Numbered from the stretch's first letter, positions 30,087 to 51,556 are shown. The stretch: DNA of 64,000 nucleotides from Dendrobates tinctorius (GCF_039654945.1 NW_027361819.1:2790001-2854000), one strand, 5' to 3'. Made by a program: numbers and translations. The notes: generated by a model from the sequence alone, not told the origin.

Positions 30087-30200
30087 TCACCGCATCTTGA
30101 TCTCGCAGCAGATGCAGTTAATGATGCTGCAGTCCGGGGGCTGGTAAACGCAGGCGAAGCCGCAGGGGCATCCGGGGACGTCGCGGCATCTGGCGCAGCC
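30087..30200 (-). CDS. Uncharacterised Cys-rich single-pass membrane protein (LOC112694756-like), last coding exon
   Basis: Acceptor CCCCCTTCTGCAG|, phase 0. Encodes GCARCRDVPGCPCGFACVYQPPDCSIINCICCEIKMR*, resembling the remembered C-terminus (PDCQSLNCLCFEIKLR) of the human ORF upstream of ALDOA. Confidence 0.85.
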   Translation of the reverse strand, partial: GCARCRDVPGCPCGFACVYQPPDCSIINCICCEIKMR

Positions 30201-30272
30201 CTGCAGAAGGGGGACAAGGGGGTCACTTACTTTACTGCATCAGATCCCACAATGCACTGCTCATTAAATAGA

Positions 30273-31541
30273 GACTGCAGCTCTGGAGGATAAGACACAA
30301 TGTAACAGCAGAATAGTGAGTGCAGCTCTGGAGGATAAGACACAATGTAACAGCAGAATACTGAGTGCAGCTCTGGAGGTGACTGCAGGATAAGACAATG
30401 TAACAGCAGAATAGTGAGTGCAGCTCTGGAGGATAAGACACAATGTAACAGCAGAATACTGAGTGCAGCTCTGGAGGTGACTGCAGGATAAGACAATGTA
30501 ACAGCAGAATAGTGAGTGCAGCTCTGGAGGATAAGACACAATGTAACAGCAGAATACTGAGTGCAGCTCTGGAGGTGACTGCAGGATAAGACAATGTAAC
30601 AGCAGAATAGTGAGTGCAGCTCTGGAGGATAAGACACAATGTAACAGCAGAATACTGAGTGCAGCTCTGGAGGTGACTGCAGGATAAGACAATGTAACAG
30701 CAGAATAGTGAGTGCAGCTTTGGAGGATAAGACACAATGTAACAGCAGAATACTGAGTGCAGCTCTGGAGGTGACTGGAGCATGACACAATGTAACAGCA
30801 GAATACTGAGTGCAGCTCTGGAGGTGACTGGAGCATGACACAATGTAACAGCAGAATACTGAGTGCAGCTCTGGAGGTGACTGGAGGATAAGACAGGATG
30901 TAACAGCAGAATAGTGAGGGCAGCTCTGGAGGTGACTGGAGGATACGACACGATGTAACAGCAGAATAGTGACTGCAGCTCTGGAGGTGACTGGAGGATA
31001 AGACACAATGTAACAGCAGAATGGTGACTGGAGGATAAGACACAATGTAACAGCAGAATAGTGAGTGCAGCTCTGGAGGTGACTGCAGGATAAGACAATG
31101 TAACAGCAGAAGAGTGAGTGCAGCTCTGGAGGTGACTGGAGCATGACACGATGTAACAGCAGAATACTGAGTGCAGCTCTGGAGGTGACTGGAGGATAAG
31201 ACAGGATGTAACAGCAGAATAGTGAGTGCAGCTCTGGAGGTGACTGGAGGGTAAAACAGTGTAACCGCAGAATAGTGAGGGCATCACTGGAGGATAAGAC
31301 ACCATGTAACAGCAGAATAGTGACTGCAGCTCTGGAGGTGACTGGAGGATAAGACACAATGTAACAGCAGAATGGTGACTGGAGGATAAGACACAATGTA
31401 ACAGCAGAATAGTGAGTGCAGCTCAGCAGGTGACTGGAGGATAAGACAACGTAACAGCAGAATAGTGAGTGCAGCTCTGGAGGATAAGACACAATGTAAC
31501 AGCAGAATGGTGAGTGCAGCTCAGCATGTGACTGGAGGATA
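30273..31541. repeat. Composite 35-57 bp minisatellite (Tx1 target array, left part)
   Basis: Units built from TGGAGGATAAGACACAATGTAACAGCAGAATAGTGAGTGCAGCTCTGGAGGTGAC. Confidence 0.95.
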
Positions 31542-31789
31542 GAGCACGCCCAGGAAGAGGAGGAGCATCTGTGCTGAGCGTCTGCAGGCTAGGGCCTTGC
31601 TAAGCTCCTGGGAAGGGAGGATTTTTCCTGCAAGGACTTTCCATCTGCCCCCTTCCCAGGAAAGAGGACTTTCCCTGGGACTGAGCGCCGGGGCTGTGCC
31701 CCTGGCTCCCATCCCCCGGCAAGCCAGCTGGGGGTGGGGGGCCTCAGCACCATCCGGAGGCCAGGGTGCAGCCAGCCAGTCCCAGGGAG

Positions 31790-34700
31790 ATGGGGAAGAG
31801 ACGGAGCCAGGAGAGAGGGGGTCGCAGGACCCAGGAGCCCCGGGACACCGGGCCCCCCGAAGCTGGTACCGTGGCGGCTCCTCCTCCCGGAGGAGTGGCG
31901 GCCCAGAGCAGAGGTGCAGTGGCAGAGCCCCCCAACATCTGGGGCTCCAGAGCTGAGGGAGAGCCATCTACCATCTACGCCTCCTGCATCCATGCGCACC
32001 TCTGCGAATATGAGGAGGCCGCCAAACAGCTGAGAAAACTCCGGGAGGAGTTAAGGGGAGCACGAGCGGTGGCTAAGAACCGGCTCCCCGCCTCGAGACG
32101 AGCTGAGGTCTCCGCCACGGTGGAGAGGCTGAAGGGGGCTATCAGGGCCTTGGAGGAGATACGGGCGGCTATCCTGAGTGGGAGCGGCCCCTTCGCAGAG
32201 AAACTGAAAAACGATGACCGGTTTAGAGCCATGACCGGAGGGTCTCCTGGGGGGTCGGGAGGCCCCTGCCAGGTGGAGGGCCAAGAGGAGGAGGAGGAGG
32301 ATGGCGGAACATCTACGCCTGCCCCACCTGAAGGCCTGGTGAGCAGCGACACCCAGGTAACATGCAGCGGGGTGGCCCCTGAGCAAGTGGCTCTCCCACC
32401 GGACTCCAGTTACTCGGAGGAAAGTGGGGGCGAGGGGGAGGCTGGTGGGAGTGGGGACAGTAGTAGTGAGGGGGGCTGCCTCGTCCTACAGCAGGTGAGG
32501 CGGATCGAGTCCCCAGAGCGGTTTGGCACACTGCTCTTTGGGGATGAGGTCTGCCCTGAGGACGAGGCAACCGGAAAGAGGAAAAAGAAAAAAAACAAGC
32601 GCAAGCCAAAAAACACCGTGGCTGACAAACTTATGTTTGTCCCTCTTTCCGGGGCCCCTCTGTCCCGCTGTATGGAACCCGCTGCCCACCCCGGCTCGGG
32701 CCCTGTGGTGGGTCCGCAGCGGGGGCGCGGGCAGAGTGATGTGTGCCTGGGCCTTACCGTCACATCTGGTGGTGGCGGTGAGGGTTCAGGCAGCGACATG
32801 GAGGTCGGTGCTGGTGCCAGTGGTGTAACAGCCGCTGGCGGTATTGGCAGTAGTGGTGTCCGGGCTCAGTCCCCGGTGGCAGGGGGGGCTGGCCTGGCGC
32901 TCAGCACGGGTACAGCCAGGACCGCACCTCCGGCGGTGAGTGCTGGGGTCTCTGGATCCCCCACGCACGGGTCCGTTAAGTCTGGTCCACTTATGGGGGT
33001 CCAGAGACCTAGAAAGGGCGTGGAGGCTGCTGTGAAGCAGCAGCTAAAAAAATGCAAGGGGCTGGTAGCTCCTCTGACGGCGCCCGTGGCAAGAGCGGGG
33101 TCCCCGGCGCGTAGACCCAAAAAGGGGTCCGTGCTGGGGGCACCGCCGCCGCTGGGCGACGAGGGGGAGTGGCCAGCCCTGCCAACATCAAGTGGTGGGT
33201 TCAGGGGCGCAGTGACAGTCCGTGAGGGGGGCGTGGCCTCCCCGAGTGTTGCCCAGCCTGCAAAGGCTGCGGCATGCGGGGGGGGCGTGTCCTCCTCGGC
33301 CGCTGTCCCGCCTGCTGTGCCCGCGTCACCTGGGGAGGGCGTGGCCTCGCAAGGGGTCACTGCTCTGCCCGGGGTGGCTGCGGCCGGCGGGGGGGGCGTG
33401 GCCTTGGCGGGCCCACTGCCTCCTGTCCCGCCTACCCCCTCAAGCAGCATAGTGCCCCCAAAAGTCGGTAGGGAGTTGTCGGGGTCCCCAGCCCGCTTAC
33501 CTCCATCTGGTGGTGCGGGGGCTCTGGCGCTCCTTGGGAAGCCGGCGGGGGCGAACAGCAGAGGGCAGGGTGCGGTGGCAGTGGCCGTCCCTGTCCTCAG
33601 TGCAAAGACACCGCAAAAAGAAAAAAAAGTGGAGCCAGAGAACCCAGGAGCTGCTGCTGCTCCCAGGCTCGGGCAGGGCGTACTGAGTGCGCTCTGCTCG
33701 GAGGTATTTAAAGGGGCAGCGGCACTCCTGGACAAGAGTTGGAGCAGTGCCAGCAGCTCCAAGGAGCAGAGCACTGGCCAGTCAGGGCCCCCAGCAGGCA
33801 GACAGGGGTACTGCAACACCAAGTCTGCTAATGTAAATAGTGGTCTATCTGGAAGTGAGAGTGGGAGTGAGATAGGAGATATTTTTGAAGAGCTGTTTGA
33901 GGACATAAATGGTGATGTGAGCGATATGGATGAGGGAGTGAGTGCGAGTGTGAATGTGGCAGTAAATGCTGGAGTGAGTGCCGGAGCGAGTGGAAATAAT
34001 AAAAGAGTGAACGGGAGAGTGAATGAGGGTGCTGGCACAAGTGGTGGTAGTGGTGGGAGGGCTGGCCCGTCTGCCCCCCCAGCCGCGAGGCCCCAACGTA
34101 ATTATGCGGGGGTCGCGGCTGGGGGTCGGGGTGGTTCCGGGGGGGTCTCCTCGCCTCCGGGCTCCGGGGACGGCGGTTTGCACCGCCGTTTCCTGGAGGC
34201 CCTCCAAAGGGGAGAAAGATCGATCATGGTAGAGGGGAGGACAGTGGACCTGTCTTTCTGGATAGAGAGACATGGCCTAGCAGCCTTCCAAAATCAAAGG
34301 GAGGGAGGGACTGTTTGGTCTCTCCCCACAGCCGGGCAGGGGCCGCCAAGAAGGAATGTGGTCCGTCTTAGGTGGGGGGGCAGTGAAGCTTGTCCACCTA
34401 GGAGCAAGGTGGTGGAGCTCCTACTTAAGATGGGCTTCGGGGCGAATGACATCTTTGCCCTGATACACCCTTCGGCGTCCCGCTTCTTCGACGTCAGCTT
34501 CGTGCGGCCAGAGGGGCTTGAGCTCTTCTGGTCAAACTACGAGCTGGTGCGAGAAGAGCCCGGATGGCGAGACTTCGTGGCTCAAGCGGTGTCTCGCCAA
34601 AATTCCGTCAAGCGAGTGACCGTGGTTACATGTAACGAGTCACTCGCAGGCGTGGACATCATGACGTGGCTTTCCCGTTACGGGGAGGTCACCGAGGTCC

Positions 34701-35812
34701 CAAAAAAGAACAGGGACGAGTTTGGCATCTGGTCGGGGGGCTGGACCTTCATGGTCAAATTGAAGGTTTCCGGCGGCACGGTCACCCACATCCCTTCCTC
34801 GGCGTTCCTGGGAAGGGACAGGATCCTGGTCTTCTTCCAGGGGCAACCGAAGGTCTGCCACAAGTGCGGCGACCCCACTCACTTCAGCGCCAACTGCAAG
34901 GTGCAGAAGTGCGCGTTGTGTGGTGGGGTAGGTCACCTGGCTGCCTTGTGCAAAGACATTCGGTGCCACCTGTGTGGTGACCTGGGTCACCCTCTCAGCC
35001 GCTGCCCTCGCTCTTTCTCTAATGCCGCCACAGGCCCGGTGGGGGGAGACCGCGGGGGGGCAACCCCCGGTGGCGCTGCTTCTGCTGTGGCAGGTGGTGG
35101 CGAAGGGGGAAGGGCTGAGGGGCCAGTGAGGAAGGGCAATGCTGCAAGGGGCCCCGCGTACCAGCGGAGGCAGGAAAAACGCCAGGGAGGTAAGGGACAG
35201 GTGGAGCCTCGGGCAACCGGGGTGATGCCTGCTCCTCCCTCCAGGCCCGTGGCCAAAGCCTCTGAGGCCCTGGGGGAGAGTGCGGTGAGTGAGGAGATCA
35301 GGAGGATGGAGAGAGAGGAGAAAGCGGCTGACTCGGACAATTCCTCTCAGTATGAAAGTGTTGATGAGGATGTCCAAGAGCAGCCTACAGCACCAGGTGG
35401 CAAAACCAGGCGTGCCAAGCGCAAAGCGGTGGGGAGGAAGGCTGACAAGCCTTCAAAGTCCCCCCCGCCCCCGACCACAAGGGTGCATACGGAAGGGCCC
35501 GCTGACCCCCCTCTGATCAGACTCTCCAACCGGTTCAGCGCCCTCGGGGGTTCAGATGATGAACCGCAAGACGAGGGTACTGGGCCGGGGGTAACACCGG
35601 AGGGTCCTTCGGGGGATGGCGGAGTCTGTCCCTCAGGGGGCATTGCTCCTCCTGAGGGGGGGACAGACCTGGAACCCGGGGGCGAGGACACCAGGGGGGG
35701 TGGGATGGACACGTCGGGAGCTTCCCTGAAAAGGAAGGTGTCTGACCCCTCCCCAGGAGGAGGTAATAGCGGGGTAGGGAAGAAATTGGCCATCCAACTC
35801 GATCACCCATGA
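31790..35812 (+). CDS. Tx1-like ORF1p (1340 aa from the first ATG): coiled coil, long low-complexity spacer, RRM-like region, three CCHC knuckles
   Basis: Open frame. Knuckles CHKCGDPTHFSANC, CALCGGVGHLAALC, CHLCGDLGHPLSRC; basic NLS-like KRKKKKNKRKPK. Confidence 0.9.
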   Translation: MGKRRSQERGGRRTQEPRDTGPPEAGTVAAPPPGGVAAQSRGAVAEPPNIWGSRAEGEPSTIYASCIHAHLCEYEEAAKQLRKLREELRGARAVAKNRLPASRRAEVSATVERLKGAIRALEEIRAAILSGSGPFAEKLKNDDRFRAMTGGSPGGSGGPCQVEGQEEEEEDGGTSTPAPPEGLVSSDTQVTCSGVAPEQVALPPDSSYSEESGGEGEAGGSGDSSSEGGCLVLQQVRRIESPERFGTLLFGDEVCPEDEATGKRKKKKNKRKPKNTVADKLMFVPLSGAPLSRCMEPAAHPGSGPVVGPQRGRGQSDVCLGLTVTSGGGGEGSGSDMEVGAGASGVTAAGGIGSSGVRAQSPVAGGAGLALSTGTARTAPPAVSAGVSGSPTHGSVKSGPLMGVQRPRKGVEAAVKQQLKKCKGLVAPLTAPVARAGSPARRPKKGSVLGAPPPLGDEGEWPALPTSSGGFRGAVTVREGGVASPSVAQPAKAAACGGGVSSSAAVPPAVPASPGEGVASQGVTALPGVAAAGGGGVALAGPLPPVPPTPSSSIVPPKVGRELSGSPARLPPSGGAGALALLGKPAGANSRGQGAVAVAVPVLSAKTPQKEKKVEPENPGAAAAPRLGQGVLSALCSEVFKGAAALLDKSWSSASSSKEQSTGQSGPPAGRQGYCNTKSANVNSGLSGSESGSEIGDIFEELFEDINGDVSDMDEGVSASVNVAVNAGVSAGASGNNKRVNGRVNEGAGTSGGSGGRAGPSAPPAARPQRNYAGVAAGGRGGSGGVSSPPGSGDGGLHRRFLEALQRGERSIMVEGRTVDLSFWIERHGLAAFQNQREGGTVWSLPTAGQGPPRRNVVRLRWGGSEACPPRSKVVELLLKMGFGANDIFALIHPSASRFFDVSFVRPEGLELFWSNYELVREEPGWRDFVAQAVSRQNSVKRVTVVTCNESLAGVDIMTWLSRYGEVTEVPKKNRDEFGIWSGGWTFMVKLKVSGGTVTHIPSSAFLGRDRILVFFQGQPKVCHKCGDPTHFSANCKVQKCALCGGVGHLAALCKDIRCHLCGDLGHPLSRCPRSFSNAATGPVGGDRGGATPGGAASAVAGGGEGGRAEGPVRKGNAARGPAYQRRQEKRQGGKGQVEPRATGVMPAPPSRPVAKASEALGESAVSEEIRRMEREEKAADSDNSSQYESVDEDVQEQPTAPGGKTRRAKRKAVGRKADKPSKSPPPPTTRVHTEGPADPPLIRLSNRFSALGGSDDEPQDEGTGPGVTPEGPSGDGGVCPSGGIAPPEGGTDLEPGGEDTRGGGMDTSGASLKRKVSDPSPGGGNSGVGKKLAIQLDHP

Positions 35813-38800
35813 TGGCTGAACTCGCCCCGTTGACGCTGGCGTCTATTAATGTCGCCAGCATTAAGTCAGATGCGGCTCGCTTCACGGCCTTTGATTTTTT
35901 CTCCCGGATTGAGGCAGAAATTTTATTCTTGCAAGAGACCAGACTAACAGACATGGGGGCCATCTATAAAGCACGGAGGGAGTGGAGGTGCGGGCCCTCA
36001 TACTGGTCTCTTGCGGCCGAGCCGTATAGCGGGGTGGCAGTCCTTTTTAAGACTGCAGCAGTTGAATGCCGACGGGTTACTGAGTTGGAAATGGGGAGGT
36101 GCCTGATCCTAGATGTCTTCATGAGGGGACAAGAGCTCCGGCTCATCAACATCTACGGCCCGCAGTCCAAGTGGGACCGCAAATGTCTCTTCCTGAGGAT
36201 CAAGCCCTTTCTTTTTACGAGCCGACAGGTGGTCTTCGGTGGGGACTTCAACACCATTACGAGGTCCCGTGACCGGGGGGGTCCCGGAGATCGCCTGGCT
36301 TATGATAGCGTCGCGTTGAATAGCATAGCCAGTGAAGCTCGCCTGGTGGATGCCCACATCCGGCACACCCCAGGTCACGGAGGTTTCACCTACCATAGGG
36401 GTAGCTGTAGGTCTAGAATAGACAGGTTTTTTTTGAAGGAGGACGCCATCTTTTCTGCTGTGTCCGCCGTTGAGGTGGAGTTCTCCGATCACTGTCTAAT
36501 TTTCTTTTCTCTGAATGTTGCAGAGACTCCTCGGATGGGAAGAGGGCTGTGGAAGCTCAATTCGTCCCTGCTGGAAGAAGCGGAGGTGAGACAATCCTTC
36601 GAGGATTTTCTTCAGAGCCAGGTACCGCTGTTGGATCTCTGTAGTAGTAAGTCAGAGTGGTGGGAGATCTTCAAAAAGCGGGTGGCGGGGTTCTTCCGTC
36701 AGCTCTCGAGCCTCAGGAGTCTGAACAGGCACCGCTTGTACCAGGCTCTGGGGAGGAAACTCGAGCAGCTTGTCTCGACTGGAGGTGACCGAGAGGAAAT
36801 CTCCAGAGTGAAATCTTTGCTCAAGAGGTGTCAGTATGATAGGCACACATCTTTGGTTTTTGAGAGGGACTTCGGGAAGTACCGCTCGCCCGACCCTTAC
36901 AGAAACTGTAAGATGTCAGTGAATTGTAAGATGGTGACAGGACTGATCGACAGTACGGGGTCCCTGAACAGATCCAAATCAGGGATCCTGGAGGTGGTCA
37001 GATCCTTCTACTCACACCTCTTGGAAAAGAAGGATCTGGATCGGGACAGGATGTCGGCTTTCCTGGCTGAAGCCATCCCTGAGCCAGGGGGTGACCCCTC
37101 TCTTGGTGTTTTGGCAGAAGAAATCAGGGAAGAGGAAGTGAGACTGGCCATTGATGGGCTTCGGCTCAAGAAATCGCCAGGTCCGGATGGCTTAACATCT
37201 GAGTTCTATAAGACTTTTAGGGACTCCTTGGTCCCCCTCTTGACAGGGGTCTTTAATGAGTGTCTCTCCTCGGGCACTCTTCCCGGCTCAATGAGGAAGT
37301 CAGCCCTCATTATTCTGTCAAAGGGTAAGGATCCGTCCCGAATCGAGAACTGGCGTCCCATAGCGCTTCTCGATACGGACCGGAAGGTTCTGGCCAAGGT
37401 GCTGTTTAATCGGCTGGTGAAGTTTGCACCCCGGCTCCTTTCAGGGGCCCAGCATTGCTCTGTTCCAGGCCGCAGTACTTTTAGTGCTGTGCTCGGTGTC
37501 CGAGAGGCAGTGGAGCAGGGTAGGGCAGGTCACTGGAAGGGGTACTTGCTGTCATTAGATCAAGCGAAAGCCTTTGACCGGGTCAACCACGAGTACCTCT
37601 GGTCCGTCCTTTTGAGGTATGGTCTGCCTGGGAGGTTTGTAAAATGGTTAGAGATCTTGTACCAAGGGGCTGAGACTTTTCCGCTGGTGAATGGTTGGTC
37701 AGGTCGTCCTTTTGAGGTGGGTTCTGGGGTCCGTCAGGGCTGTCCGCTGAGCCCGCTTTTATACGTGTTCGCGATCGATCCCTTCTTAAGGAGGGTAGAT
37801 CGTGGACCGTTGGCGGGAGTCGGGATGGACCGGGCGGGCTCTGGCTCCTCTCTGAGGGTGGTGGCGTACGCCGATGATGTTTCCCTGTTCGTATCCTCGA
37901 GAGGGGAGGCGGACTGGGTCATGTCGGAGGTAGTGCGCTACTCGGAGGCATCCGGGTCCATGATCAACCGGGATAAGTGTGAAAGTCTCTGGCTGGGAGG
38001 GGGAGATCCTAGTTTTGATCTCCCGGACACCCTTCCAGGGCCCCAGGCCACCGCCAAAATTCTAGGCATCGAATTTGGCCCCGGGGACTACCCCCAGCAA
38101 AATTGGGAGGGCAGACTTAAGATCGCCGCCCAAAAGGTGGACCAATGGAAGGGTTGGTCTTTAACCCTGAGGGAAAGGGTTGCCCTGGCTAAAGGCTATC
38201 TGCTACCTTTATTGATATACCTGGGCAGTGTGTGCATCTTGCCGGAACCTCTCTGGACGCGGGTCTATAGCCTGTTCTTCCAATTGTTATGGGGGAATAG
38301 GCTTAACCTAATCAAGAGGGAGGTTACATACCGTACGAGGAGACTAGGCGGGTTGGGTATGGTCAACCCGGTGGTGTTTCTAGTAAACACCTTTCTTAAG
38401 ACTAACATCTCTAACCTCTGGCTAGAGAGGGCTCCTCCGTGGGTAGTCTCCTGCAAGGGTTGGCTTTGGCCTTTCTTCCAGGAATGGGAGACAGGAGGGC
38501 GGGTGAAGGACCTACGCACACCTCATGGGCATCTTCCGGCTTACGCTACCCCGGTTCTGAAGGTGATCCGCCGGTGGGGTCTGGGAATGTGGGAAATCAG
38601 GACCATGTCGAGGCAGTGCCTTGACAGGAGGGTCCTGTTGACCCATTTCCAGAAGCCCCTGGCCCTTAAGGATTGCCCAGGCCGGGATCTGGAGGTCGGG
38701 CTGGGGCTTTTAAATTCTAAGCGGATCCCCATGAAGTTTTGGGACTTGACCTGGCGTTGCTTCCACGGGAGGCTGTATGTAAGGGACAACTTGAAGTGCA

Positions 38801-39994: not shown

Positions 39995-40032
<38 letters not shown>

Positions 40033-40435: not shown

Positions 40436-40591
40436 TGGAGGATAAGACACAATGTAACAGCAGAATGGTGACTGGAGGATAAGACACAATGTAACAGCAG
40501 AATGGTGAGTGCAGCTCAGCATGTGACTGGAGGATAATATACGATGTCGCAGCAGAATAGTGACCGCTGCTCTGGAGGTGACTGGAGGATA
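40436..40591. repeat. Minisatellite spacer (about 3 units) between the two retrotransposons
   Basis: Same TGGAGGATAAGACACAATGTAACAGCAGAAT family, including one divergent unit (AATATACGATGTCGCAGC...) not present left of copy 1. Confidence 0.92.
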
Positions 40592-40839: not shown

Positions 40840-43800
40840 ATGGGGAAGAGACGGAGCCAGGAGAGAGGGGGTCGCAGGACCCAGGAGCCCCGGGACACCG
40901 GGCCCCCCGAAGCTGGTACCGTGGCGGCTCCTCCTCCCGGAGGAGTGGCGGCCCAGAGCAGAGGTGCAGTGGCAGAGCCCCCCAACATCTGGGGCTCCAG
41001 AGCTGAGGGAGAGCCGTCTACCATCTACGCCTCCCGCATCCATGCGCACCTCTGCGAATATGAGGAGGCCGACAAACAGCTGAGAAAACTCCGGGAGGAG
41101 TTAAGGGGAGCACGAGCGGTGGCTAAGAACCGGCTCCCCGCCTCGAGACGAGCTGAGGTCTCCGCCACGGTGGAGAGGCTGAAGGGGGCTATCAGGGCCT
41201 TGGAGGAGATACGGGCGGCTATCCTGAGTGGGAGCGGCCCCTTTGCAGAGAAACTGAAAAACGATGACCGGTTTAGAGCCATGACCGGAGGGTCTCCTGG
41301 GGGGTCGGGAGGCCCCTGCCAGGTGGAGGGCCAAGAGGAGGAGGAGGAGGATGGCGGAACATCTACGCCTGCCCCACCTGAAGGCCTGGTGAGCAACAAC
41401 ACCCAGGTAACAAGCAGCGGGGTGGCCCCTGAGCAAGTGGCTCTCCCACCGGACTCCAGTTACTCGGAGGAAAGTGGGGGCGAGGGGGAGGCTGGTGGAA
41501 GTGGGGACAGTAGTAGTGAGGGGGGCTGCCTCGTCCTACAACAGGTGAGGCGGATCGAGTCCCCAGAGCGGTTTGGCACACTGCTCTTTGGGGATGAGGT
41601 CTGCCCTGAGGACGAGGCAACCGGAAAGAGGAAAAAGAAAAAAAACAAGCGCAAGCCAAAAAACACCGTGGCTGACAAACTTATGTTTGTCCCTCTTTCC
41701 GGGGCCCCTCTGTCCCGCTGTATGGAACCCGCTGCCCACCCCGGCTCGGGCCCTGTGGTGGGTCCGCAGCGGGGGCGCGGGCAGAGTGATGTGTGCCTGG
41801 ACCTTACCGTCACATCTGGTGGTGGCGGTGAGGGTTCAGGCAGCGACATGGAGGTCGGTGCTGGTGCCAGTGGTGTAACAGCCGCTGGCGGTATTGGCGG
41901 TAGTGGTGTCCGGGCTCAGTCCCCGGTGGCAGGGGGGGCTGGCCTGGCGCTCAGCACGGGTACAGCCAGGACCGCACCTCCGGCGGTGAGTGCTGGGGTC
42001 TCTGGATCCCCCACGCACGGGTCCGTTAAGTCTGGTCCACTTATGGGGGTCCAGAGACCTAGAAAGGGCGTGGAGGCTGCTGTGAAGCAGCAGCTAAAAA
42101 AATGCAAGGGGCTGGTAGCTCCTCTGACGGCGCCCGTGGCAAGAGCGGGGTCCCCGGCGCGTAGACCCAAAAAGGGGTCCGTGCTGGGGGCACCGCGGGG
42201 GAGTGGCCAGCCCTGCCAACATCAAGTGGTGGGTTCAGGGGCGCAGTGACGGTCCGTGAGGGGGGCGTGGCCTCCCCGAGTGTTGCCCGGCCTGCAAAGG
42301 CTGCGGCATGCGGGGGGGCGTGTCCTCCTCGGCCGCTGTCCCGCCCGCTGTGCCCGCGTCACCTGGGGAGGGCGTGGCCTCGCAAGGGGTCACTGCTCTG
42401 CCCGGGGTGGCTGCAGCCGGCGGGGGGGGGTGTGGCCTTGGCGGGCCCACTGCCTCCTGTCCCGCCTACCCCCTCAAGCAGCATAGTGCCCCCAAAAGTC
42501 GGTAGGGAGTTGTCGGGGTCCCCAGCCCGCTTACCTCCATCTGGTGGTGCGGGGGCTCTGGCGCTCCTTGGGAAGCCAGCGGGGGCGAACAGCAGAGGGC
42601 AGGGTGCGGTGGCAGTGGCTGTCCCTGTCCTCAGTGCAAAGACACCGCAAAAAGAAAAAAAAGTGGAGCCAGAGAACCCAGGAGCTGCTGCTGCTCCCAG
42701 GCTCGGGCAGGGCGTACTGAGTGCGCTCTGCTCGGAGGTATTTAAAGGGGCAGCGGCACTCCTGGACAAGAGTTGGAGCAGTGCCAGCAGCTCCAAGGAG
42801 CAGAGCACTGGCCAGTCAGGGCCCCCAGCAGGCAGGCAGGGGTACTGCAACACCAAGTCTGCTAATGTAAATAGTGGTCTATCTGGAAGTGAGAGTGGGA
42901 GTGAGATAGGAGATATTTTTGAAGAGCTGTTTGAGGACATAAATGGTGATGTGAGCGATATGGATGCTGGAGTGAGTGCGAGTGTGAATGTGGCAGTAAA
43001 TGCTGGAGTGAGTGCCGGAGCGAGTGGAAATAATAAAAGAGTGAACGGGAGAATGAATGAGGGTGCTGGCACAAGTGGTGGTAGTGGTGGGAGGGCTGGC
43101 CCGTCTGCCCCCCCAGCCGCGAGGCCCCAACGTAATTATGCGGGGGTCGCGGCTGGGGGTCGGGGTGGTTCCGGGGGGGGGTCTCCTCGCCTCCGGGCTC
43201 CGGGGACGGCGGTTTGCACCGCCGTTTCCTGGAGGCCCTCCAAAGGGGAGAAAGATCGATCATGGTAGAGGGGAGGACAGTGGACCTGTCTTTCTGGATA
43301 GAGAGACATGGCCTAGCAGCCTTCCAAAATCAAAGGGAGGGAGGGACTGTTTAGTCTCTCCCCACAGCCGGGCAGGGGCCGCCAAGAAGGAATGTGGTCC
43401 GTCTTAGGTGGGGGGGCAGTGAAGCTTGTCCACCTAGGAGCAAGGTGGTGGAGCTCCTCCTTAAGATGGGCTTCGGGGCGAATGACATCTTTGCCCTGAT
43501 ACACCCTTCGGCGTCCCGCTTCTTCGACGTCAGCTTCGTGCGGCCAGAGGGGCTTGAGCTCTTCTGGTCAAACTACGAGCTGGTGCGAGAAGAGCCCGGA
43601 TGGCGAGACTTCGTGGCTCAAGCGGTGTCTCGCCAAAATTCCGTCAAGCGAGTGACCGTGGTTACATGTAACGAGTCACTCGCAGGCGTGGACATCATGA
43701 CGTGGCTTTCCCGTTACGGGGAGGTCACCGAGGTCCCAAAAAAGAACAGGGACGAGTTTGGCATCTGGTCGGGGGGCTGGACCTTCATGGTCAAATTGAA

Positions 43801-44848
43801 GGTTTCCGGCGGCACGGTCACCCACATCCCTTCCTCGGCGTTCCTGGGAAGGGACAGGATCCTGGTCTTCTACCAGGGGCAACCGAAGGTCTGCCACAAG
43901 TGCGGCGACCCCACTCACTTCAGCGCCAACTGCAAGGTGCAGAAGTGCGCGTTGTGTGGTGGGGTAGGTCACCTGGCTGCCTTGTGCAAAGACATTCGGT
44001 GCCACCTGTGTGGTGACCTGGGTCACCCTCTCAGCCGCTGCCCTCGCTCTTTCTCTAATGCCGCCACAGGCACGGTGGGGGGAGACCGCGGGGGGGCAAC
44101 CCCCGGTGGCGCTGCTTCTGCTGTGGCAGGTGGTGGCGAAGGGGGAAGGGCTGAGGGGCCAGTGAGGAAGGGCAATGCTGCAAGGGGCCCCGCGTACCAG
44201 CGGAGGCAGGAAAAGCGCCAGGGAGGTAAGGGACAGGTGGAGCCTCGGGCAACCGGGGTGATGCCTGCTCCTCCCTCCAGGCCCGTGGCCAAAGCCTCTG
44301 AGGCCCTGGGGGAGAGTGCGGTGAGTGAGGAGATCAGGAGGATGGAGAGAGAGGAGAAAGCGGCTGACTCGGACAATTCCTCTCAGTATGAAAGTGTTGA
44401 TGAGGATGTCCAAGAGCAGCCTACAGCACCAGGTGGCAAAACCAGGCGTGCCAAGCGCAAAGCGGTGGGGAGGAAGGCTGACAAGCCTTCAAAGTCCCCC
44501 CCGCCCCCGACCACAAGGGTGCATACGGAAGGGCCCGCTGACCCCCCTCTGATCAGACTCTCCAACCGGTTCAGCGCCCTCGGGGGTTCAGATGATGAAC
44601 CGCAAGACGAGGGTACTGGGCCGGGGGCAACACCGGAGGGTCCTTCAGGGGATGGCGGAGTCCGTTCCGCAGGGGGCATTGCTCCTCCTGAGGGGGGGAC
44701 AGACCTGGAACCCGGGGGCGAGGACACCGGGGGGGGTGGGATGGACACGTCGGGAGCTTCCCTGAAAAGGAAGGTGTCTGACCCCTCCCCAGGAGGAGGT
44801 AATAGCGGGGTAGGGAAGAAATTGGCCATCCAACTCGATCACCCATGA
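40840..44848 (+). pseudogene. Disrupted ORF1 of copy 2
   Basis: Relative to copy 1: 16-nt deletion near 42196, G-run indels (-1, +1, +2), and TGG>TAG at 43352-43354. Confidence 0.9.
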
Positions 44849-47800
44849 TGGCTGAACTCGCCCCGTTGACGCTGGCGTCTATTAATGTCGCCAGCATTAA
44901 GTCAGATGCGGCTCGCTTCACGGCCTTTGATTTTTTCTCCCGGATTGAGGCAGAAATTTTATTCTTGCAAGAGACCAGACTAACAGACATGGGGGCCATC
45001 TATAAAGCACGGAGGGAGTGGAGGTGCGGGCCCTCATACTGGTCTCTTGCGGCCGAGCCGTATAGCGGGGTGGCAGTCCTTTTTAAGACTGCAGCAGTTG
45101 AATGCCGACGGGTTACTGAGTTGGAAATGGGGAGGTGCCTGATCCTAGATGTCTTCATGAGGGGACAAGAGCTCCGGCTCATCAACATCTACGGCCCGCA
45201 GTCCAAGTGGGACCGCAAATGTCTCTTCCTGAGGATCAAGCCCTTTCTTTTTACGAGCCGGCAGGTGGTCTTCGGTGGGGACTTCAACACCATTACGAGG
45301 TCCCGTGACCGGGGGGGTCCCGGAGATCGCCTGGCTTATGATAGCGTCGCGTTGAATAGCATAGCCAGTGAAGCTCGCCTGGTGGATGTCCACATCCGGC
45401 ACACCCCAGGTCACGGGGGTTTCACCTACCATAGGGGTAGCAGTAGGTCTAGAATAGACAGGTTTTTTTTGAAGGAGGACGCCATCTTTTCTGCTGTGTC
45501 CGCCGTTGAGGTGGAGTTCTCCGATCACTGTCTAATTTTCTTTTCTCTGAATGTTGCAGAGACTCCTCGGATGGGAAGAGGGCTGTGGAAGCTCAATTCG
45601 TCCCTGCTGGAAGAAGCGGAGGTGAGACAATCCTTCGAGGATTTTCTTCAGAGCCAGGTACCGCTGTTGGATCTCTGTAGTAGTAAGTCAGAGTGGTGGG
45701 AGATCTTCAAAAAGCGGGTGGCGGGGTTCTTCCGTCAGCTCTCGAGCCTCAGGAGTCTGAACAGGCACCGCTTGTACCAGGCCCTGGGGAGGAAACTCGA
45801 GCAGCTTGTCTCGACTGGAGGTGACCGAGAGGAAATCTCCAGAGTGAAATCTTTGCTCAAGAGGTGTCAGTATGATAGACACACATCTTTGGTTTTTGAG
45901 AGGGACTTCGGGAAGTACCGCTCGCCCAACCCTTACAGAAACTGTAAGATGTCAGTGAATTGTAAGATGGTGACAGGACTGATCGACAGTACGGGGTCCC
46001 TGAACAGATCCAAATCAGGGATCCTGGAGGTGGTCAGATCCTTCTACTCACACCTCTTGGAAAAGAAGGATCTGGATCAGGATAGGATGTCGGCTTTCCT
46101 GGCTGAAGCCATCCCTGAGCCAGGGGGTGACCCCTCTCTTGGTGTTTTGGCAGAAGAAATCAGGGAAGAGGAAGTGAGACTGGCCATTGATGGGCTTCGG
46201 CTCAAGAAATCGCCAGGTCCGGATGGCTTAACATCTGAGTTCTATAAGACTTTTAGGGACTCCTTGGTCCCCCTCTTGACAGGGGTCTTTAATGAGTGTC
46301 TCTCCTCGGGCACTCTTCCCGGCTCAATGAGGAAGTCAGCCCTCATTATTCTGTCAAAGGGTAAGGATCCGTCCCGAATCGAGAACTGGCGTCCCATAGC
46401 GCTTCTCGATACAGACCGGAAGGTTCTGGCCAAGGTGCTGTTTAATCGGCTGGTGAAGTTTGCACCCCGGCTCCTTTCAGGGGCCCAGCATTGCTCTGTT
46501 CCAGGCCGCAGTACTTTTAGTGCTGTGCTCGGTGTCCGAGAGGCAGTGGAGCAGGGTAGGGCAGGTCACTGGAAGGGGTACTTGCTGTCATTAGATCAAG
46601 CGAAAGCCTTTGACCGGGTCAACCACGAGTACCTCTGATCCGTCCTTTTGAGGTATGGTCTGCCTGGGAGGTTTGTAAAATGGTTAGAGATCTTGTACCA
46701 AGGGGCTGAGACTTTTCCGCTGGTTAACGGTTGGTCAGGTCGTCCTTTTGAGGTGGGTTCTGGGGTCCGTCAGGGCTGTCCGCTGAGCCCGCTTTTATAC
46801 GTGTTCGCGATCGATCCCTTCTTAAGGAGGGTAGATCGTGGACCGTTGGCGGGAGTCGGGATGGACCGGGCGGGCTCTGGCTCCTCTCTGAGGGTGGTGG
46901 CGTACGCCGATGATGTTTCCCTGTTCGTATCTTCGAGAGGGGAGGCGGACTGGGTCATGTCGGAGGTAGTGCGCTACTCGGAGGCATCCGGGTCCATGAT
47001 CAACCGGGATAAGTGTGAAAGTCTCTGGCTGGGAGGGGGAGATCCTAGTTTTGATCTCCCGGACACCCTTCCAGGGCCCCAGGCCACCGCCAAAATTCTA
47101 GGCATCGAATTTGGCCCCGGGGACTACCCCCAGCAAAATTGGGAGGGCAGACTTAAGATCGCCGCCCAAAAGGTGGACCAATGGAAGGGTTGGTCTTTAA
47201 CCCTGAGGGAAAGGGTTGCCCTGGCTAAAGGCTATCTGCTACCTTTATTGATATACCTGGGCAGTGTGTGCATCTTGCCGGAACCTCTCTGGACGCGGGT
47301 CTATAGCCTGTTCTTCCAATTGTTATGGGGGAATAGGCTTAACCTAATCAAGAGGGAGGTTACATACCGTACGAGGAGACTAGGCGGGTTGGGTATGGTC
47401 AACCCGGTGGTGTTTCTAGTAAACACCTTTCTTAAGACTAACATCTCCAACCTCTGGCTAGAGAGGGCTCCTCCGTGGGTAGTCTCCTGCAAGGGTTGGC
47501 TTTGGCCTTTCTTCCAGGAATGGGAGACAGGAGGGCGGGTGAAGGACCTACGCACACCTCATGGGCATCTCCCGGCTTATGCTACCCCGGTTCTGAAGGT
47601 GATCCGCCGGTGGGGTCTGGGAATGTGGGAAATCAGGACCATGTCGAGGCAGTGACAGGAGGGTCCTGTTGACCCATTTCCAGAAGCCCCTGGCCCTTAA
47701 GGATTGCCCAGGCCGGGATCTGGAGGTCGGGCTGGGGCTTTTAAATTCTAAGCGGATCCCCATGAAGTTTTGGGACTTGACCTGGCGTTGCTTCCACGGG

Positions 47801-48232
47801 AGGCTGTATGTAAGGGACAACTTGAAGTGCAGGAACTCCGATGACCGGGGTTGCCCTCGTGAGGAGTGTGGCGACGTGCTGGAAAGCATGGAGCACTTCC
47901 TGCTTCATTGTCCCTTTAATGCAGAGGTTTACAACAGGGTGGGTGCCTCCATACGTTGGCCGCGGCTGGCGTCCCTCTCCTACGCTGAATGGGCCTATGG
48001 AGCGTTCAGATCCCTGGGTGGCCGGGACCCGTGCACTTTATTCCTAGTCAGTGCAGCGGTTAGGTTCCACACTTGGAATGCACGGTGCCTAGTTTCGACG
48101 CGGAAAAAAACCCTCCCAAGGGATGAGGTGGTAGGAAACATCTTGGGTGACCTGGTGAAGGTCCGTTCTTTGGAGTTCGAAAGGTTGGGTGTGAGGAAGG
48201 CCTCTTGGCTTTGGAGAGGCCTCTCCTTTTAA
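44845..48232 (+). pseudogene. Disrupted ORF2 of copy 2
   Basis: TGG>TGA at 46636-46638 within the RT domain; 5-nt deletion and frameshift near 47653. Confidence 0.92.
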
Positions 48233-49441
48233 AAACGCACTCAAGGGAGAGCTAGCTCCGTGCGAATGAGGGTAGGGATAGCATAAGTTTCACTGGGTGT
48301 GTTAGGGACAGAAGTAGAGGCAGATAGGGACAGGGAGGGACAGGCACTGAGGGACAGATAGAGAGTTAGTTATGATAAGTTAGGTAGAGTAGGGGCAGGT
48401 AGGGGCAGATAGGGACAGGTTTCTTTTTTAGGGACAGAAGTAGGGACAGTCTTAGTTCTTGAGGGATAGGATGAATGTGTTAGTGAGGGATGGAGCCTCT
48501 AGAACCCCTTTTTCCTGGTGGTGGGCTGGTGCATGCCACCTTAGCTTTTTTGTTTTAAAAACAGGACATATAATGGATATTGGGCTTACAGGTGCCAAAC
48601 TTGGGCCTTGGGTATGCAAATGCTGTGTTTAGTTTGTATATTAATGCGTAAGTAGATGGGATGGTATTGAGAGTTTTGGAAAATGTCTTTTGGTTGTGCT
48701 TTGGTAAAAGGAAAAACATATAACACACGTTTTTTTGTTTTTTTTTAGTTAGAATGTGTGGATGGGGTGTAGTCAGGTTGGGAGGGGGGTGCATGGGGGG
48801 TGGTGGATGGATGACCGGATGCCAAGAGCAACATAAAGGAGCAGGGCAGGAGAAGTAGACTCTGCGGACCCTGGAAATAGTTTTCGTGTGGAATCAAAAG
48901 GCCATAAACTTTTGTGGACCAGATTTTGCAGTGACAAGGCTACAAACTTGTAGGACCTGCGGTGCAAGGTGGTGGGAAAAAAGGCTGCGAACTTGTTGCC
49001 ATGTGTGGGAGAGGGAAAAAAAAAAAAAAAAAAATCTTTGCTGTGTAATAGGAGGTAAGGTTTGTCGGCCAAAGTGGCAGAGTTCTTGTTTTTTTTCAAG
49101 GCGGAGGGCCAGGAAAGGGTTATTTTCGTTTGGTTTTTGTAAATAGTAAAATTGTAAATAGTAAACTAGTAAAATCGGTGAGGTGTGAATGGGGGTGAAT
49201 GGGGGTGAATGGAGTGAGAGTGGGGAGTGGGGTTTATGTTTCTTTGTATTCTCTTTTCAGTGGATTCCTGCTGGGGGACCCTAAGCTGCCGAGCTCAGTG
49301 GGGGACAAGGAAAGGATTTGGACTTTCAGTTGTTTGCGCATGTTTTGCACATTTTATGTCTGTCTATGTTGGTTTTCTTTAGTTTATGTATTGTGGTTTG
49401 TTTCTGAGTGTAATTTTGATAATTTTGTAAAATAAAAGAGT

Positions 49442-49494
49442 TGGAGGATAAGACACAATGTAACAGCAGAATAGTGAGTGCAGCTCTGGAGGTG
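49442..49494. repeat. Final unit of the Tx1 target minisatellite
   Basis: TGGAGGATAAGACACAATGTAACAGCAGAATAGTGAGTGCAGCTCTGGAGGTG, followed by unique sequence. Confidence 0.9.
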
Positions 49495-49592
49495 TCCTGA
49501 TAAAGTCTTCACACCCATGTGTTCTCTTGGATTTCCAGTGACAGCACTAAGTACAAGTATTTGGGACTGGAGGTTTTCTTGATTTCACTCAC

Positions 49593-49739
49593 CGGTTTGG
49601 CCGGACAGCAGGAGTCCATACAGCGGGTGACGGACGGGACCTTGCAGTCACAGGACTGGGCGCAGCCTGCACACATATCACAGAAGCCAAAGTCACCCAC
49701 CTTCTGCCACCCGAAACAGGACGGGCAGCAGCCTCGAGC
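49593..49739 (-). CDS. Cys-rich membrane protein (LOC112694756-like), coding exon 3
   Basis: CTTATTTTCAG| ... CCG|GTGAGT, 147 nt, phase 0/0. ARGCCPSCFGWQKVGDFGFCDMCAGCAQSCDCKVPSVTRCMDSCCPAKP. Confidence 0.87.
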
Positions 49740-49847
49740 CTGAAAATAAGAGGGGGGAGGGCAGCAGGTGATGAGGAGCGAGAACAACACATCCCAGAAT
49801 GCCCGGAACCAGCAGCAATCAGCATCTAACCAGTCATGTCCTAGGGA

Positions 49848-50325
49848 AGGGGCGATGGGCCACTCAAGGGGAGGGGGGGGGGCGATGGGCCACTCAAGGG
49901 GAGGGGGGGGGCGATGGGCCACTCAAGGGGAGGGGGGGGGGGGGCGATGGGCCACTCAAGGGGAGGGGGGGGGGCGATGGGCCACTCAAGGGGAGGGGGG
50001 GGGGGCGATGGGCCACTCAAGGGGAGGGGGGGGGGGCGCGATGGGCCACTCGAGGGGAGGGGGGGGGGAGGGCGATGGGCCACTCGAGGGGAGGGGGGGG
50101 GGAGGGCGATGGGCCACTCGAGGGGAGGGGGGGGGGAGGGCGATGGGCCACTCGAGGGGAGGGGGGGGGGAGGGCGATGGGCCACTCGAGGGGAGGGGGG
50201 GGGGAGGGCGATGGGCCACTCGAGGGGAGGGGGGAGGGCGATGGGCCACTCGAGGGGAGGGGGGAGGGCGATGGGCCACTCAAAGGGAGGGGGGGTGATG
50301 GGCCAATCGAGGGGAGGGGAGGGGG
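49848..50325. repeat. About 28-35 bp G-run minisatellite
   Basis: GGCGATGGGCCACTC(A/G)AGGGGAGGGGGGGG with a variable G tract; intronic. Confidence 0.92.
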
Positions 50326-50365
50326 GCCATCTGGACCCGGTAGTCAGAGTTCTCGGATCGCCCAC

Positions 50366-50506
50366 CTGGAGACACTGGTGAATCATAAGGAGAAGCAGCA
50401 GCACAATGAGATACAGCGAGACGGTCAGGAAGATGACCCCCGGCAGAGGGACGCTGAGCTCAGGAGCGACCGCCGCCGAGGAAGAGACCGCAGGGAATGT
50501 CAGAGC
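50366..50506 (-). CDS. Cys-rich membrane protein (LOC112694756-like), coding exon 2 (transmembrane segment)
   Basis: CTTTTCTTTTCCAG| ... CAG|GTGGGC, 141 nt, phase 0/0. ALTFPAVSSSAAVAPELSVPLPGVIFLTVSLYLIVLLLLLMIHQCLQ. Confidence 0.87.
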
Positions 50507-50644
50507 CTGGAAAAGAAAAGAGTGAGAAACGGCAGCAACAAACAACAGAGACGGCGAGACGCCCGACACTGCGGGACGAGAACGATCCTCACCGTCACCA
50601 TCAGGGGGATTATAGCACGAGAGAATGGAGACAGGAGACTCCGC

Positions 50645-51530
50645 AGAGGGACGAGAGACCCCGCCGTCCGCACACAGAGGGACCAGAGACCCCGCCGTCC
50701 GCACACAGAGGGACCAGAGACCCCGCCGTCCGCACACAGAGGGACCAGAGACCCCGCCGTCCGCACACAGAGGGACCAGAGACCCCGCCGTCCGCACACA
50801 GAGGGACCAGAGACCCCGCCGTCCGCACACAGGGGGACCAGAGACCCCGCCGTCCGCACACAGGGGGACCAGAGACCCCGCCGTCCGCACACAGGGGGAC
50901 CAGAGACCCCGCCGTCCGCACACAGGGGGACCAGAGACCCCGCCGTCCGCACACAGGGGGACCAGAGACCCCGCCGTCCGCACACAGGGGGACCAGAGAC
51001 CCCGCCGTCCGCACACAGAGGGACCGGAGACCCCGCCGTCCACACACAGAGGGACCGGAGACCCCGCCGTCCGCACACAGAGACCCCGCCGTCCGCACAC
51101 AGAGACCCCGCCGTCCGCACACAGAGGGACCAGAGACCCCGCCGTCCGCACACAGAGGGACCAGAGACCCCGCCGTCCGCACACAGAGACCCCGCCGTCC
51201 GCACACAGAGACCCCGCCGTCCGCACACAGAGGGACCAGAGACCCCGCCGTCCGCACGCAGAGGGACCAGAGACCCCGCTGTCCGCACCCAGAGGGACCA
51301 GAGACCCCGCCGTCCGCACACAGAGGGACCAGAGACCCCGCCGTCCGCACGCAGAGGGACCAGAGACCCCGCTGTCCGCACCCAGAGGGACCAGAGACCC
51401 CGCCGTCCGCACACAGAGGGACCAGAGACCCCGCCGTCCGCACGCAGAGGGACCAGAGACCCCGCTGTCCGCACCCAGAGGGACCAGAGACCCCGCCGTC
51501 CGCACACAGAGACCCCGCCGTCCGCACTCA
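50645..51530. repeat. 31-bp minisatellite (with 22-bp variants)
   Basis: AGAGGGACCAGAGACCCCGCCGTCCGCACAC. Confidence 0.95.
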
Positions 51531-51550
51531 GAGGGGTGGGGGACACTCAC

Positions 51551-51556
51551 CGCCAT
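51551..51556 (-). CDS. Cys-rich membrane protein, start-codon micro-exon (exon 51575-51551; coding part ATG GCG)
   Basis: TTCTCTCTTCCTCCTAG|GATCCAGTAGCCGAAGGTGATGGCG|GTGAGT. Good Kozak context (G at -3 and +4), phase 0 into the next exon. Confidence 0.7.

What the first reader, a model, noticed from the sequence alone, without database searches (positions are those of the whole stretch)
30087..51556. Hidden conserved 135-aa single-pass protein with a 21-cysteine tail, split by a 19-kb intron
Seen: four phase-0 GT-AG coding exons join to give MA-ALTFPAVSSSAAVAPELSVPLPGVIFLTVSLYLIVLLLLLMIHQCLQ-ARGCCPSCFGWQKVGDFGFCDMCAGCAQSCDCKVPSVTRCMDSCCPAKP-GCARCRDVPGCPCGFACVYQPPDCSIINCICCEIKMR*. It has one hydrophobic helix, no obvious signal peptide, and 21 Cys in the last 89 residues (CC, CxC, CxxC). 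From memory, a similar uncharacterised ORF sits at the syntenic position upstream of human ALDOA (LOC112694756) in the 16p11.2 CNV interval. Inference: an ancient, functionally undescribed small membrane protein, probably heavily palmitoylated or metal-binding.
Basis: partly seen in the sequence, partly recalled or inferred. Interest (0 to 1): 0.8.

Follow-up and report, generated by a model that had tools for sequence, protein, structure and literature searches.

The report
Frog orthologue of ALDOA-upstream cysteine-rich protein
The four exons are a real, spliced and expressed frog gene for a small cysteine-rich membrane protein, but it is the orthologue of a vertebrate gene already reported upstream of human ALDOA in 2019, and its function is still unknown.

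Summary
Four phase-0 GT-AG exons on the minus strand join to a 135-aa protein: a short N-tail, one membrane helix, and 21 Cys in the last 89 residues. Transcript contigs from four public runs show all three junctions, including the one across the 19,392-bp intron.

The gene is not new. It is 84% identical to an annotated Hyla sarda protein, and 13 frog species have annotated orthologues. It belongs to the family that NCBI labels "LOC112694756 homolog" in turtles and si:ch211-198p11.6 in fish. Mudge et al. 2019 described the human member (ENSG00000285043, 139 aa, 4 exons, within the ALDOA 5'UTR).

Supporting evidence:
- **Synteny:** aldoa lies 18 kb downstream on the same strand.
- **Selection:** dN/dS is 0.14-0.22 against two other frogs.
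- **Gene structure:** intron positions are shared from lamprey to frog, and also with a hemichordate, an annelid and a spider.
- **Big intron:** it is a local accident, made of two 98.6%-identical LINE copies plus a minisatellite.

No Pfam family, no solved relative and no confident AlphaFold fold were found for the Cys tail. The charge bias around the helix predicts N-out/C-in, so I infer a cytosolic metal-thiolate and/or S-acylated tail. That mechanism is untested.

The parts
51551..51707 (-). Exon 1: 5'UTR (observed up to at least 51707) plus the first two codons, ATG GCG, at 51556-51551
   Evidence: Contigs X1 record 7 and X2 record 21 reach 51707 and 51676. The donor is GTGAGT. The N-terminus MAAL/MAPL/MAPV is conserved in frogs, a ray and lamprey.
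51566..51616 (-). 16-codon upstream ORF in the 5'UTR, ending 9 nt before the main ATG
   Evidence: Read directly from the sequence. It lies inside the transcribed 5'UTR. Its conservation was not tested.
50507..51550 (-). Intron 1 (1044 bp), mostly a 31-nt minisatellite at 50644-51511
   Evidence: Joint 50505>51550 in runs X1 and X2; TRF.
50366..50506 (-). Exon 2 (141 nt, phase 0): N-tail, the LPLPG motif and the membrane helix, ending in HQCLQ
   Evidence: The homologous exon is 138-141 nt in lamprey, ray and two frogs, and 111 nt in a cyprinid.
49740..50365 (-). Intron 2 (626 bp) with a 34-nt minisatellite at 49849-50295
   Evidence: Joint 49738>50365 in four runs; TRF.
49593..49739 (-). Exon 3 (147 nt, phase 0): first half of the Cys-rich tail (the CAQSCDC..P and CMDSCCP motifs)
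   Evidence: It is 90% identical to Hyla sarda over this exon.
30201..49592 (-). Intron 3 (19,392 bp): minisatellite 30283-31541 plus two tandem copies of an ~8.8-kb non-LTR retrotransposon on the + strand, at 31651-40471 (two long open frames) and 40701-49477 (frames interrupted)
   Evidence: The loose end at 49592 equals window 30170-30199. Pfam finds ZCCHC3-type RNA-binding domains, an endonuclease and a reverse transcriptase. The two copies are 98.6% identical over 8825 bp. TRF.
30087..30200 (-). Exon 4, coding part (111 nt plus TGA): the most conserved block, C.C..AC.YQPPDC..INCICCEIKMR
   Evidence: Cys127 and Cys129 are invariant in all 70 aligned family members.
29869..30086 (-). 3'UTR with an ATTAAA signal at 29874-29869
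   Evidence: The X1 contig continues 152 nt past the stop, and X1 holds 0.35 of the sampled words of 29750-30086, so this stretch is contiguous genomic 3'UTR. The signal was read. The actual poly(A) site was not observed.
10408..12263 (-). Context: the first coding exons of a class-I aldolase (aldoa-like), 18 kb downstream on the same strand
   Evidence: Pfam Glycolytic, E down to 4e-30. The best solved relatives are aldolase A (126 bits, against 109 for C and 79 for B).

Best explanation
Shown: this is the frog orthologue of the vertebrate gene known as human ENSG00000285043/LOC112694756 and zebrafish si:ch211-198p11.6. It is a four-coding-exon gene lying between tlcd3b and aldoa. It ends in its own 3'UTR, seen for at least 152 nt past the stop. 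It encodes a 135-aa protein under purifying selection.

Inferred (about 65%): the single hydrophobic segment (residues about 25-44) acts as a reverse signal-anchor. The ~24-residue N-tail would then face outside or the lumen, and the 89-residue Cys-rich tail would face the cytosol.

Inferred (about 50%): in the reducing cytosol the conserved CC, CxC and CxxC cysteines do not form disulfides. Instead they coordinate metal ions (Zn2+ or Cu+) in metallothionein-like thiolate clusters. The cysteines next to the membrane (Cys47, Cys53/54, Cys57) may be S-acylated. The protein would thus be a membrane-tethered metal-binding or redox-sensing module.

The 19-kb intron has no functional meaning. It was inflated by two recent LINE insertions into a minisatellite.
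For: Gene model and expression.

Orthology:
- 84% identity to Hyla sarda LOC130284161 and 13 annotated frog orthologues.
- A profile search finds 113 representatives at E<=1e-3.
- Turtles are named 'LOC112694756 homolog' and the fish are named si:ch211-198p11.6. The Atlas cluster carries the same name.
- Mudge et al. 2019 describe the human 139-aa, 4-exon CDS in the ALDOA 5'UTR.

Synteny: aldoa lies downstream on the same strand. The order is the same in Spea (TLC-domain gene, this gene, aldolase), and in a cyprinid an aldolase gene lies 3.4 kb downstream on the same strand.

Exon structure: conserved from lamprey to frog and in a hemichordate, an annelid and a spider.

Selection: dN/dS 0.14 and 0.22.

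Topology: in 50 non-redundant members, K+R averages 0.28 in the 15 residues before the helix and 2.50 after it. 47 of 50 have more after and none has fewer. There are almost no Cys before the helix and about 23 after it.

Cys tail: seven Cys positions are at least 86% conserved in frogs, other vertebrates and invertebrates alike. AlphaFold gives the helix pLDDT above 90 but the tail only 40-50, as expected for a domain that folds only around metal.
Against: No metal-binding or acylation evidence exists. No Pfam family and no solved relative were found. The low AlphaFold confidence could equally mean disorder or a shallow alignment. For the window protein itself the charge bias is weak (0 against 1 K/R, plus one His), so the topology call rests on the whole family. 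Conserved Cys spacing is also typical of extracellular disulfide-rich domains. Whether the frog transcript also reads on into aldoa, as in human, was not resolved; run X19 holds every sampled word down to 29750, past the ATTAAA signal. tlcd3b beyond the window end is known only from an earlier unchecked note.
Confidence: 0.85

Rival explanations
1. Opposite topology. The helix is a type II signal-anchor or an uncleaved signal, and the Cys-rich tail is lumenal or extracellular. It would be folded by about ten disulfides into a small knotted ectodomain that acts as a ligand or receptor module.
For: Strictly conserved Cys spacing with conserved Pro, Asp and Asn between the cysteines is typical of disulfide-rich extracellular domains. 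Nothing tested here shows the redox state.
Against: The positive-inside bias points the other way in 47 of 50 non-redundant members and the opposite way in none. The Cys count is variable and often odd among orthologues (16-23 in vertebrates). The tail has no confident AlphaFold fold. No hit was found to any extracellular Cys-rich Pfam family.
Confidence: 0.2
2. The tail is mainly a multiply S-acylated lipid anchor, like a cysteine-string, with no metal cluster. It would drive sorting into membrane microdomains or vesicles.
For: Cys47, Cys53/54 and Cys57 sit within 13 residues of the helix on the predicted cytosolic side. Cys47 and Cys54 are at least 95% conserved in vertebrates. From general knowledge, juxtamembrane cysteines of type III proteins such as synaptotagmin are palmitoylated.
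Against: The best-conserved block is the distal C-terminus (Cys122, 127 and 129 with QPPDC..INC.C.E). It lies about 80 residues from the helix and contains conserved non-Cys residues, which suggests a folded or liganded unit rather than only lipid attachment.
Confidence: 0.25
3. It is not a protein-function gene but a regulatory upstream ORF of long aldoa transcripts, as its position in the human ALDOA 5'UTR might suggest.
For: Mudge et al. found no human transcript carrying this CDS that does not also use ALDOA exons. Linkage to aldolase on the same strand is conserved from cyprinid to frog.
Against: The amino-acid sequence is under purifying selection (dN/dS 0.14-0.22). It is also conserved in invertebrates that have no aldolase within 10 kb. 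The frog transcript has its own 3'UTR and an ATTAAA signal. 18 kb and two tRNA genes separate it from the aldoa ATG exon. In zebrafish it is a separate transcription unit.
Confidence: 0.03

Closest known systems
Human ENSG00000285043 / LOC112694756 (139-aa CDS in ALDOA 5'UTR exons; Mudge et al. 2019, PMC6886504); zebrafish si:ch211-198p11.6
   Same: Same family by profile search and by NCBI naming. Both have four coding exons, a short N-tail, one helix and a Cys-rich tail ending in C.C.EIK.R (CFEIKLR in most; CCEIKMR here). Both sit directly upstream of aldolase A on the same strand. Both are uncharacterised.
   Different: In human the CDS is reported only on transcripts that read into ALDOA. 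Here contigs carry a contiguous 3'UTR of at least 152 nt with an ATTAAA signal, and 18 kb plus two tRNA genes precede aldoa, which is more like the separate unit reported for zebrafish. Intron 3 is 19.4 kb here, against 0.4-0.7 kb in two other frogs.
Metallothioneins (a functional analogy only)
   Same: Dense CC, CxC and CxxC cysteines (21 in 89 residues), and no stable predicted fold without metal.
   Different: This protein is membrane-anchored and larger, it contains aromatic residues, and it has no Pfam metallothionein hit. Metal binding has not been shown.
Type III (N-out/C-in) small membrane proteins with juxtamembrane cysteines, e.g. stannin or the synaptotagmin N-terminus (from general knowledge); influenza B NB appeared as a weak Atlas look-alike (0.76)
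   Same: Short N-tail without a signal peptide, a single helix, basic residues and cysteines just after the helix.
   Different: No sequence homology. The Atlas score is below the level the tool treats as evidence. The long, conserved distal Cys block has no counterpart in those proteins.
Keratin-associated proteins (the name given by automatic annotation to the Xenopus laevis, elephant and Limulus members)
   Same: High cysteine content only.
   Different: No Pfam keratin-associated family matches. These proteins have a membrane helix and an unrelated conserved motif set. The name is an artefact of composition.

Membership tests
LOC112694756 / ENSG00000285043 / si:ch211-198p11.6 family | Significant sequence similarity to named members | tested here: met
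   Exon 3 alone hits 7 frog proteins at E 4e-22 to 4e-15. The frog profile hits fish si:ch211-198p11.6 and lamprey. A profile built from the frog, fish, ray, lamprey and lizard hits (A3) also hits the cluster of turtle 'LOC112694756 homolog' at E 3e-32.
LOC112694756 / ENSG00000285043 / si:ch211-198p11.6 family | Architecture: short N-tail, one membrane helix preceded by LPLP(A/G), and a Cys-rich tail with CAQSCDC..P, CLD..CP and a terminal C.C.C..QPPDC..INC.C.EIK(L/M)R | tested here: met
LOC112694756 / ENSG00000285043 / si:ch211-198p11.6 family | Four coding exons with phase-0 introns at fixed positions (after the first few codons (two in frogs), after HQCLQ, and after CCPxxx) | tested here: met
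   Window. Lamprey, ray, cyprinid and two frogs. The paper's table gives 4 in the column after the CDS length, read here as coding exons, for human.
LOC112694756 / ENSG00000285043 / si:ch211-198p11.6 family | Position between tlcd3b and aldoa, on the same strand as aldoa | tested here: met
aldoa-like exons at 12263-10408 on the minus strand. The full order was seen in Spea. The human order comes from PMC11354020.
LOC112694756 / ENSG00000285043 / si:ch211-198p11.6 family | Co-transcription with ALDOA (reported for human only) | tested here: inconclusive
Read-through into aldoa was not examined.
Metallothionein | Match to a metallothionein family profile | tested here: not met
   No Pfam hit, even at E<=10, for the exon pieces or for 17 family members.
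Metallothionein | Metal-thiolate clusters | not testable with these tools
   This needs metal analysis of the purified tail.
Keratin-associated proteins | Match to keratin-associated protein profiles; no membrane helix | tested here: not met
   No Pfam hit. AlphaFold predicts a membrane helix with pLDDT above 90.

The most novel reading that the evidence does not exclude
The family is not just vertebrate, as published, but at least bilaterian-wide: hemichordate, annelid, bivalve, spiders, horseshoe crab, a nematode, an orthonectid and Seison, with a borderline choanoflagellate hit. The three invertebrate genes mapped (hemichordate, annelid, spider) share the phase-0 intron positions. It would then be an unrecognised ancient class of N-out/C-in membrane proteins carrying a cytosolic metallothionein-like metal or redox module. 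Its human copy would be an overlooked dosage-sensitive gene in the 16p11.2 BP4-BP5 interval.
Probability: 0.3. Interest if true: 0.65.

Novelty: new member of a known kind. Interest (0 to 1): 0.35.

Why it matters
The frog copy adds clean evidence that this little-studied gene is a genuine protein-coding unit: all junctions are seen in RNA, it has its own 3'UTR, and it is under strong purifying selection. Xenopus and other frogs could therefore serve as knockout models. The human orthologue lies in the 16p11.2 BP4-BP5 deletion/duplication interval and is reported as brain-expressed, yet it has no known function and is missing from most candidate-gene discussions. These narrow the hypotheses to a cytosolic thiol-rich tail, which is directly testable.

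Tried and rejected
- **Whole protein as one query:** the joined 135-aa peptide has no reference and I did not type it. The window protein was therefore searched only as exon pieces; exon 3 was embedded in the 137-aa ORF 49512-49922 using the region option. The rest went through its orthologues.
- **Pfam:** nothing for the exon pieces, for 7 frog orthologues, or for 10 diverse members.
- **Solved structures:** the family profile gave only chance-level phospholipase A2 hits, E>5.
- **AlphaFold2:** with a 70-sequence alignment the mean pLDDT was 56.9 and only the helix was confident. No fold search was run, because a low-confidence model gives meaningless matches.
- **Stop codon inside a splice donor:** the TGA here sits in CG|GTGAGG, which could hint at alternative splicing. 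I rejected this because the cyprinid, lamprey, ray and lizard have TAG, TGA-GTT, TGA-TGG and TAA without the motif.
- **Ancient aldolase linkage:** no aldolase within 10 kb in Ptychodera, Capitella or Argiope. None either within 10 kb in the lamprey, ray, Mixophyes or Phrynosoma loci; that is too short a flank to conclude anything.
- **AC093512.2:** this clone-based alias is ambiguous in papers and was not used.
- **Functional literature:** none found for LOC112694756, ENSMUSG00000114515 or ch211-198p11.6.
- **Human material:** no human contig was fetched, compared or searched.

Full report
**1. Observation**

On the minus strand the four proposed exons are present exactly as described: 51556-51551, 50506-50366, 49739-49593 and 30200-30087. 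Their lengths are 6, 141, 147 and 114 nt, all multiples of three. The donors are GTGAGT, GTGGGC and GTGAGT. Each acceptor is a pyrimidine tract ending in CAG. The joined CDS is 408 nt and gives 135 aa plus TGA. It has one hydrophobic segment (about residues 25-44) and 21 Cys, all in the last 89 residues.

**2. Expression and splicing**

Two look-ups found public runs of the same organism that hold the exons but not the unique intron sequence. Their contigs were laid on 49300-51800.
- The joint 49738>50365 (626 bases skipped, CT..AC on the + strand, which is GT..AG for the gene) appears in four runs.
- The joint 50505>51550 (1044 bases skipped) appears in two runs.
- Contigs ending at 49592 continue into letters that map uniquely to window 30170-30199. 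This is the exon 3 to exon 4 junction across the 19,392-bp intron.
- The 5'UTR reaches at least 51707.
- The X1 contig carries 152 nt beyond the stop. X1 holds 0.35 of the sampled words of 29750-30086, so that extension is the contiguous genomic 3'UTR. An ATTAAA signal lies at 29874-29869.

The runs are only guessed to be RNA. However, they show spliced forms at 100% identity, and X1-X3 have no depth on unique intron sequence (X19 has a little in intron 1). This leaves a very young retrocopy as the only, unlikely, alternative.

**3. Relatives**

The joined peptide has no reference, so I searched exon 3 inside the 137-aa ORF 49512-49922 using the region option.
- Seven annotated frog proteins came back, 67-90% identical over that exon. 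Their full lengths are 135-194 aa, and most share the N-terminus MAALT and the C-terminus C.CCEIK(M/L)R.
- A profile of these found six more frogs, a ray, lamprey, many teleosts (all named si:ch211-198p11.6) and a lizard fragment.
- The exhaustive profile search gave 113 representatives at E<=1e-3 and 41 at E<=1e-10.
- Cluster names show turtles labelled 'LOC112694756 homolog', 139-aa afrotherian and xenarthran proteins, and geckos.
- Among invertebrates they show Ptychodera, Capitella, Pinctada, orb-weaving spiders, Limulus, Seison, Trichinella and Intoshia, plus a borderline choanoflagellate hit (E 8e-4).
- The window protein is 84% identical to Hyla sarda LOC130284161 and is not itself in the collection.
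- Several database names are artefacts, including keratin-associated protein, elongation factor Tu and G-protein gamma 4.

**4. Gene structure and selection**

Mapping proteins onto their loci shows the same plan in lamprey, ray, cyprinid and two frogs: a tiny first coding exon, then phase-0 introns after the HQCLQ-equivalent and after the CCPxxx-equivalent. Ptychodera, Capitella and Argiope share these positions and have one extra phase-0 exon. This supports true homology rather than a match of Cys-rich composition. Nei-Gojobori dN/dS for the window is 0.14 against Mixophyes and 0.22 against Spea, with dS of 0.8-1.0. Seven Cys positions (54, 79, 94, 109, 122, 127, 129) are at least 86% conserved in frogs, other vertebrates and invertebrates alike. 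Cys127 and Cys129 are invariant.

**5. Synteny and prior knowledge**

Class-I aldolase exons lie at 12263-10408 on the same strand. They are closest to aldolase A and start with MPTEYPAF. An earlier unchecked note places tlcd3b about 26 kb beyond the window end. In Spea the order is a TLC-domain gene, this gene, then aldolase, within 21 kb. In a cyprinid the aldolase gene follows 3.4 kb downstream. Clinical papers list the human order TLCD3B, LOC112694756, ALDOA.

Mudge et al. 2019 (PMC6886504) already reported the human gene ENSG00000285043:
- a 139-aa CDS (the supplementary table lists 4, read here as coding exons), found by PhyloCSF within ALDOA 5'UTR exons;
- conserved among vertebrates and brain-expressed;
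- co-transcribed with ALDOA in human, but a separate unit in zebrafish;
- uncharacterised.

I found no functional paper. The finding is therefore a new member of a known but uncharacterised kind.

**6. The big intron**

Intron 3 consists of a 53/98-nt minisatellite (30283-31541) and two tandem + strand copies of an ~8.8-kb non-LTR retrotransposon. The copies are 98.6% identical (31651-40471 and 40701-49477). Each has ORF1 with ZCCHC3-type RNA-binding domains and ORF2 with an endonuclease and a reverse transcriptase. The first copy has long uninterrupted frames; the second is interrupted. The same intron is 400 bp in Spea and 723 bp in Mixophyes. The 19-kb size is therefore recent and incidental.

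**7. How it probably works**

There is no Pfam family and no solved relative. AlphaFold2 is confident only for the helix at residues 23-50; the tail has pLDDT 40-50. In 50 non-redundant full-length members, K+R averages 0.28 in the 15 residues before the helix and 2.50 after it. 47 of 50 have more after and none has fewer. By the positive-inside rule this predicts N-out/C-in.

A tail of about 23 cysteines in the reducing cytosol is best explained by metal-thiolate coordination, S-acylation near the membrane, or both. This is inference; nothing here tests it. The main rival is the opposite topology with a disulfide-rich ectodomain. The idea that the ORF is only a regulatory upstream ORF of aldoa is contradicted by three things: the amino-acid-level constraint, conservation in invertebrates with no aldolase within 10 kb, and the gene's own 3'UTR.

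**8. Limits**

- The poly(A) site was not observed.
- Tissue of expression is unknown because the runs are coded.
- No human contig was fetched or compared.

Noticed in passing
window 29615-29687 (-) and 21095-21166 (-): tRNA-Lys(UUU) lies about 400 nt downstream of the stop codon on the same strand and is followed by a T-run. tRNA-Gly(UCC) lies further down. Both sit between this gene and aldoa.
   Followed up: partly
window 31651-40471 and 40701-49477 (+): Two tandem copies of an ~8.8-kb non-LTR retrotransposon, 98.6% identical, antisense to the gene inside intron 3. The first keeps two long open frames (1348 and 1130 codons); the second is interrupted. A 53-nt minisatellite unit flanks them on both sides (31029-31081 equals 49442-49494).
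   Followed up: partly
window 49841-51559 (-): A 572-codon frame stays open from just before the ATG through intron 1, exon 2 and most of intron 2. The two GC-rich minisatellites there (31-nt and 34-nt units) carry no stop in that frame. RNA contigs show both introns are spliced out, so the long frame is not a coding feature.
   Followed up: yes
window 51566-51616 (-): A 16-codon upstream ORF in the 5'UTR ends 9 nt before the main ATG. The main ATG has G at -3 and G at +4.
   Followed up: no
window 49384-49551: This short stretch of intron 3 has very high contig depth in all four runs (thousands, against about 10 on the exons), with many rearranged joints. It is a high-copy, transcribed repeat related to the 53-nt minisatellite unit.
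   Followed up: no
L004:12606-12752 (Phrynosoma platyrhinos): The deposited 88-aa lizard protein (called 'Agouti signaling protein' in UniRef) skips the family's exon 3. That exon is intact in the locus (76% identical to the gecko protein). The next gene downstream is an SH2/SH3 adaptor, with no aldolase within 10 kb.
   Followed up: partly
L007:28189-31812 (Ptychodera flava): A second small gene (132 aa, no Pfam hit) follows the family member 6 kb downstream on the same strand. It may be a tandem paralogue.
   Followed up: no
protein clusters: Family members carry misleading automatic names in public databases: keratin-associated protein 5-2, 10-11 and 4-1-like, G-protein subunit gamma 4, elongation factor Tu, and histone-lysine N-methyltransferase MEDEA.
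   Followed up: partly
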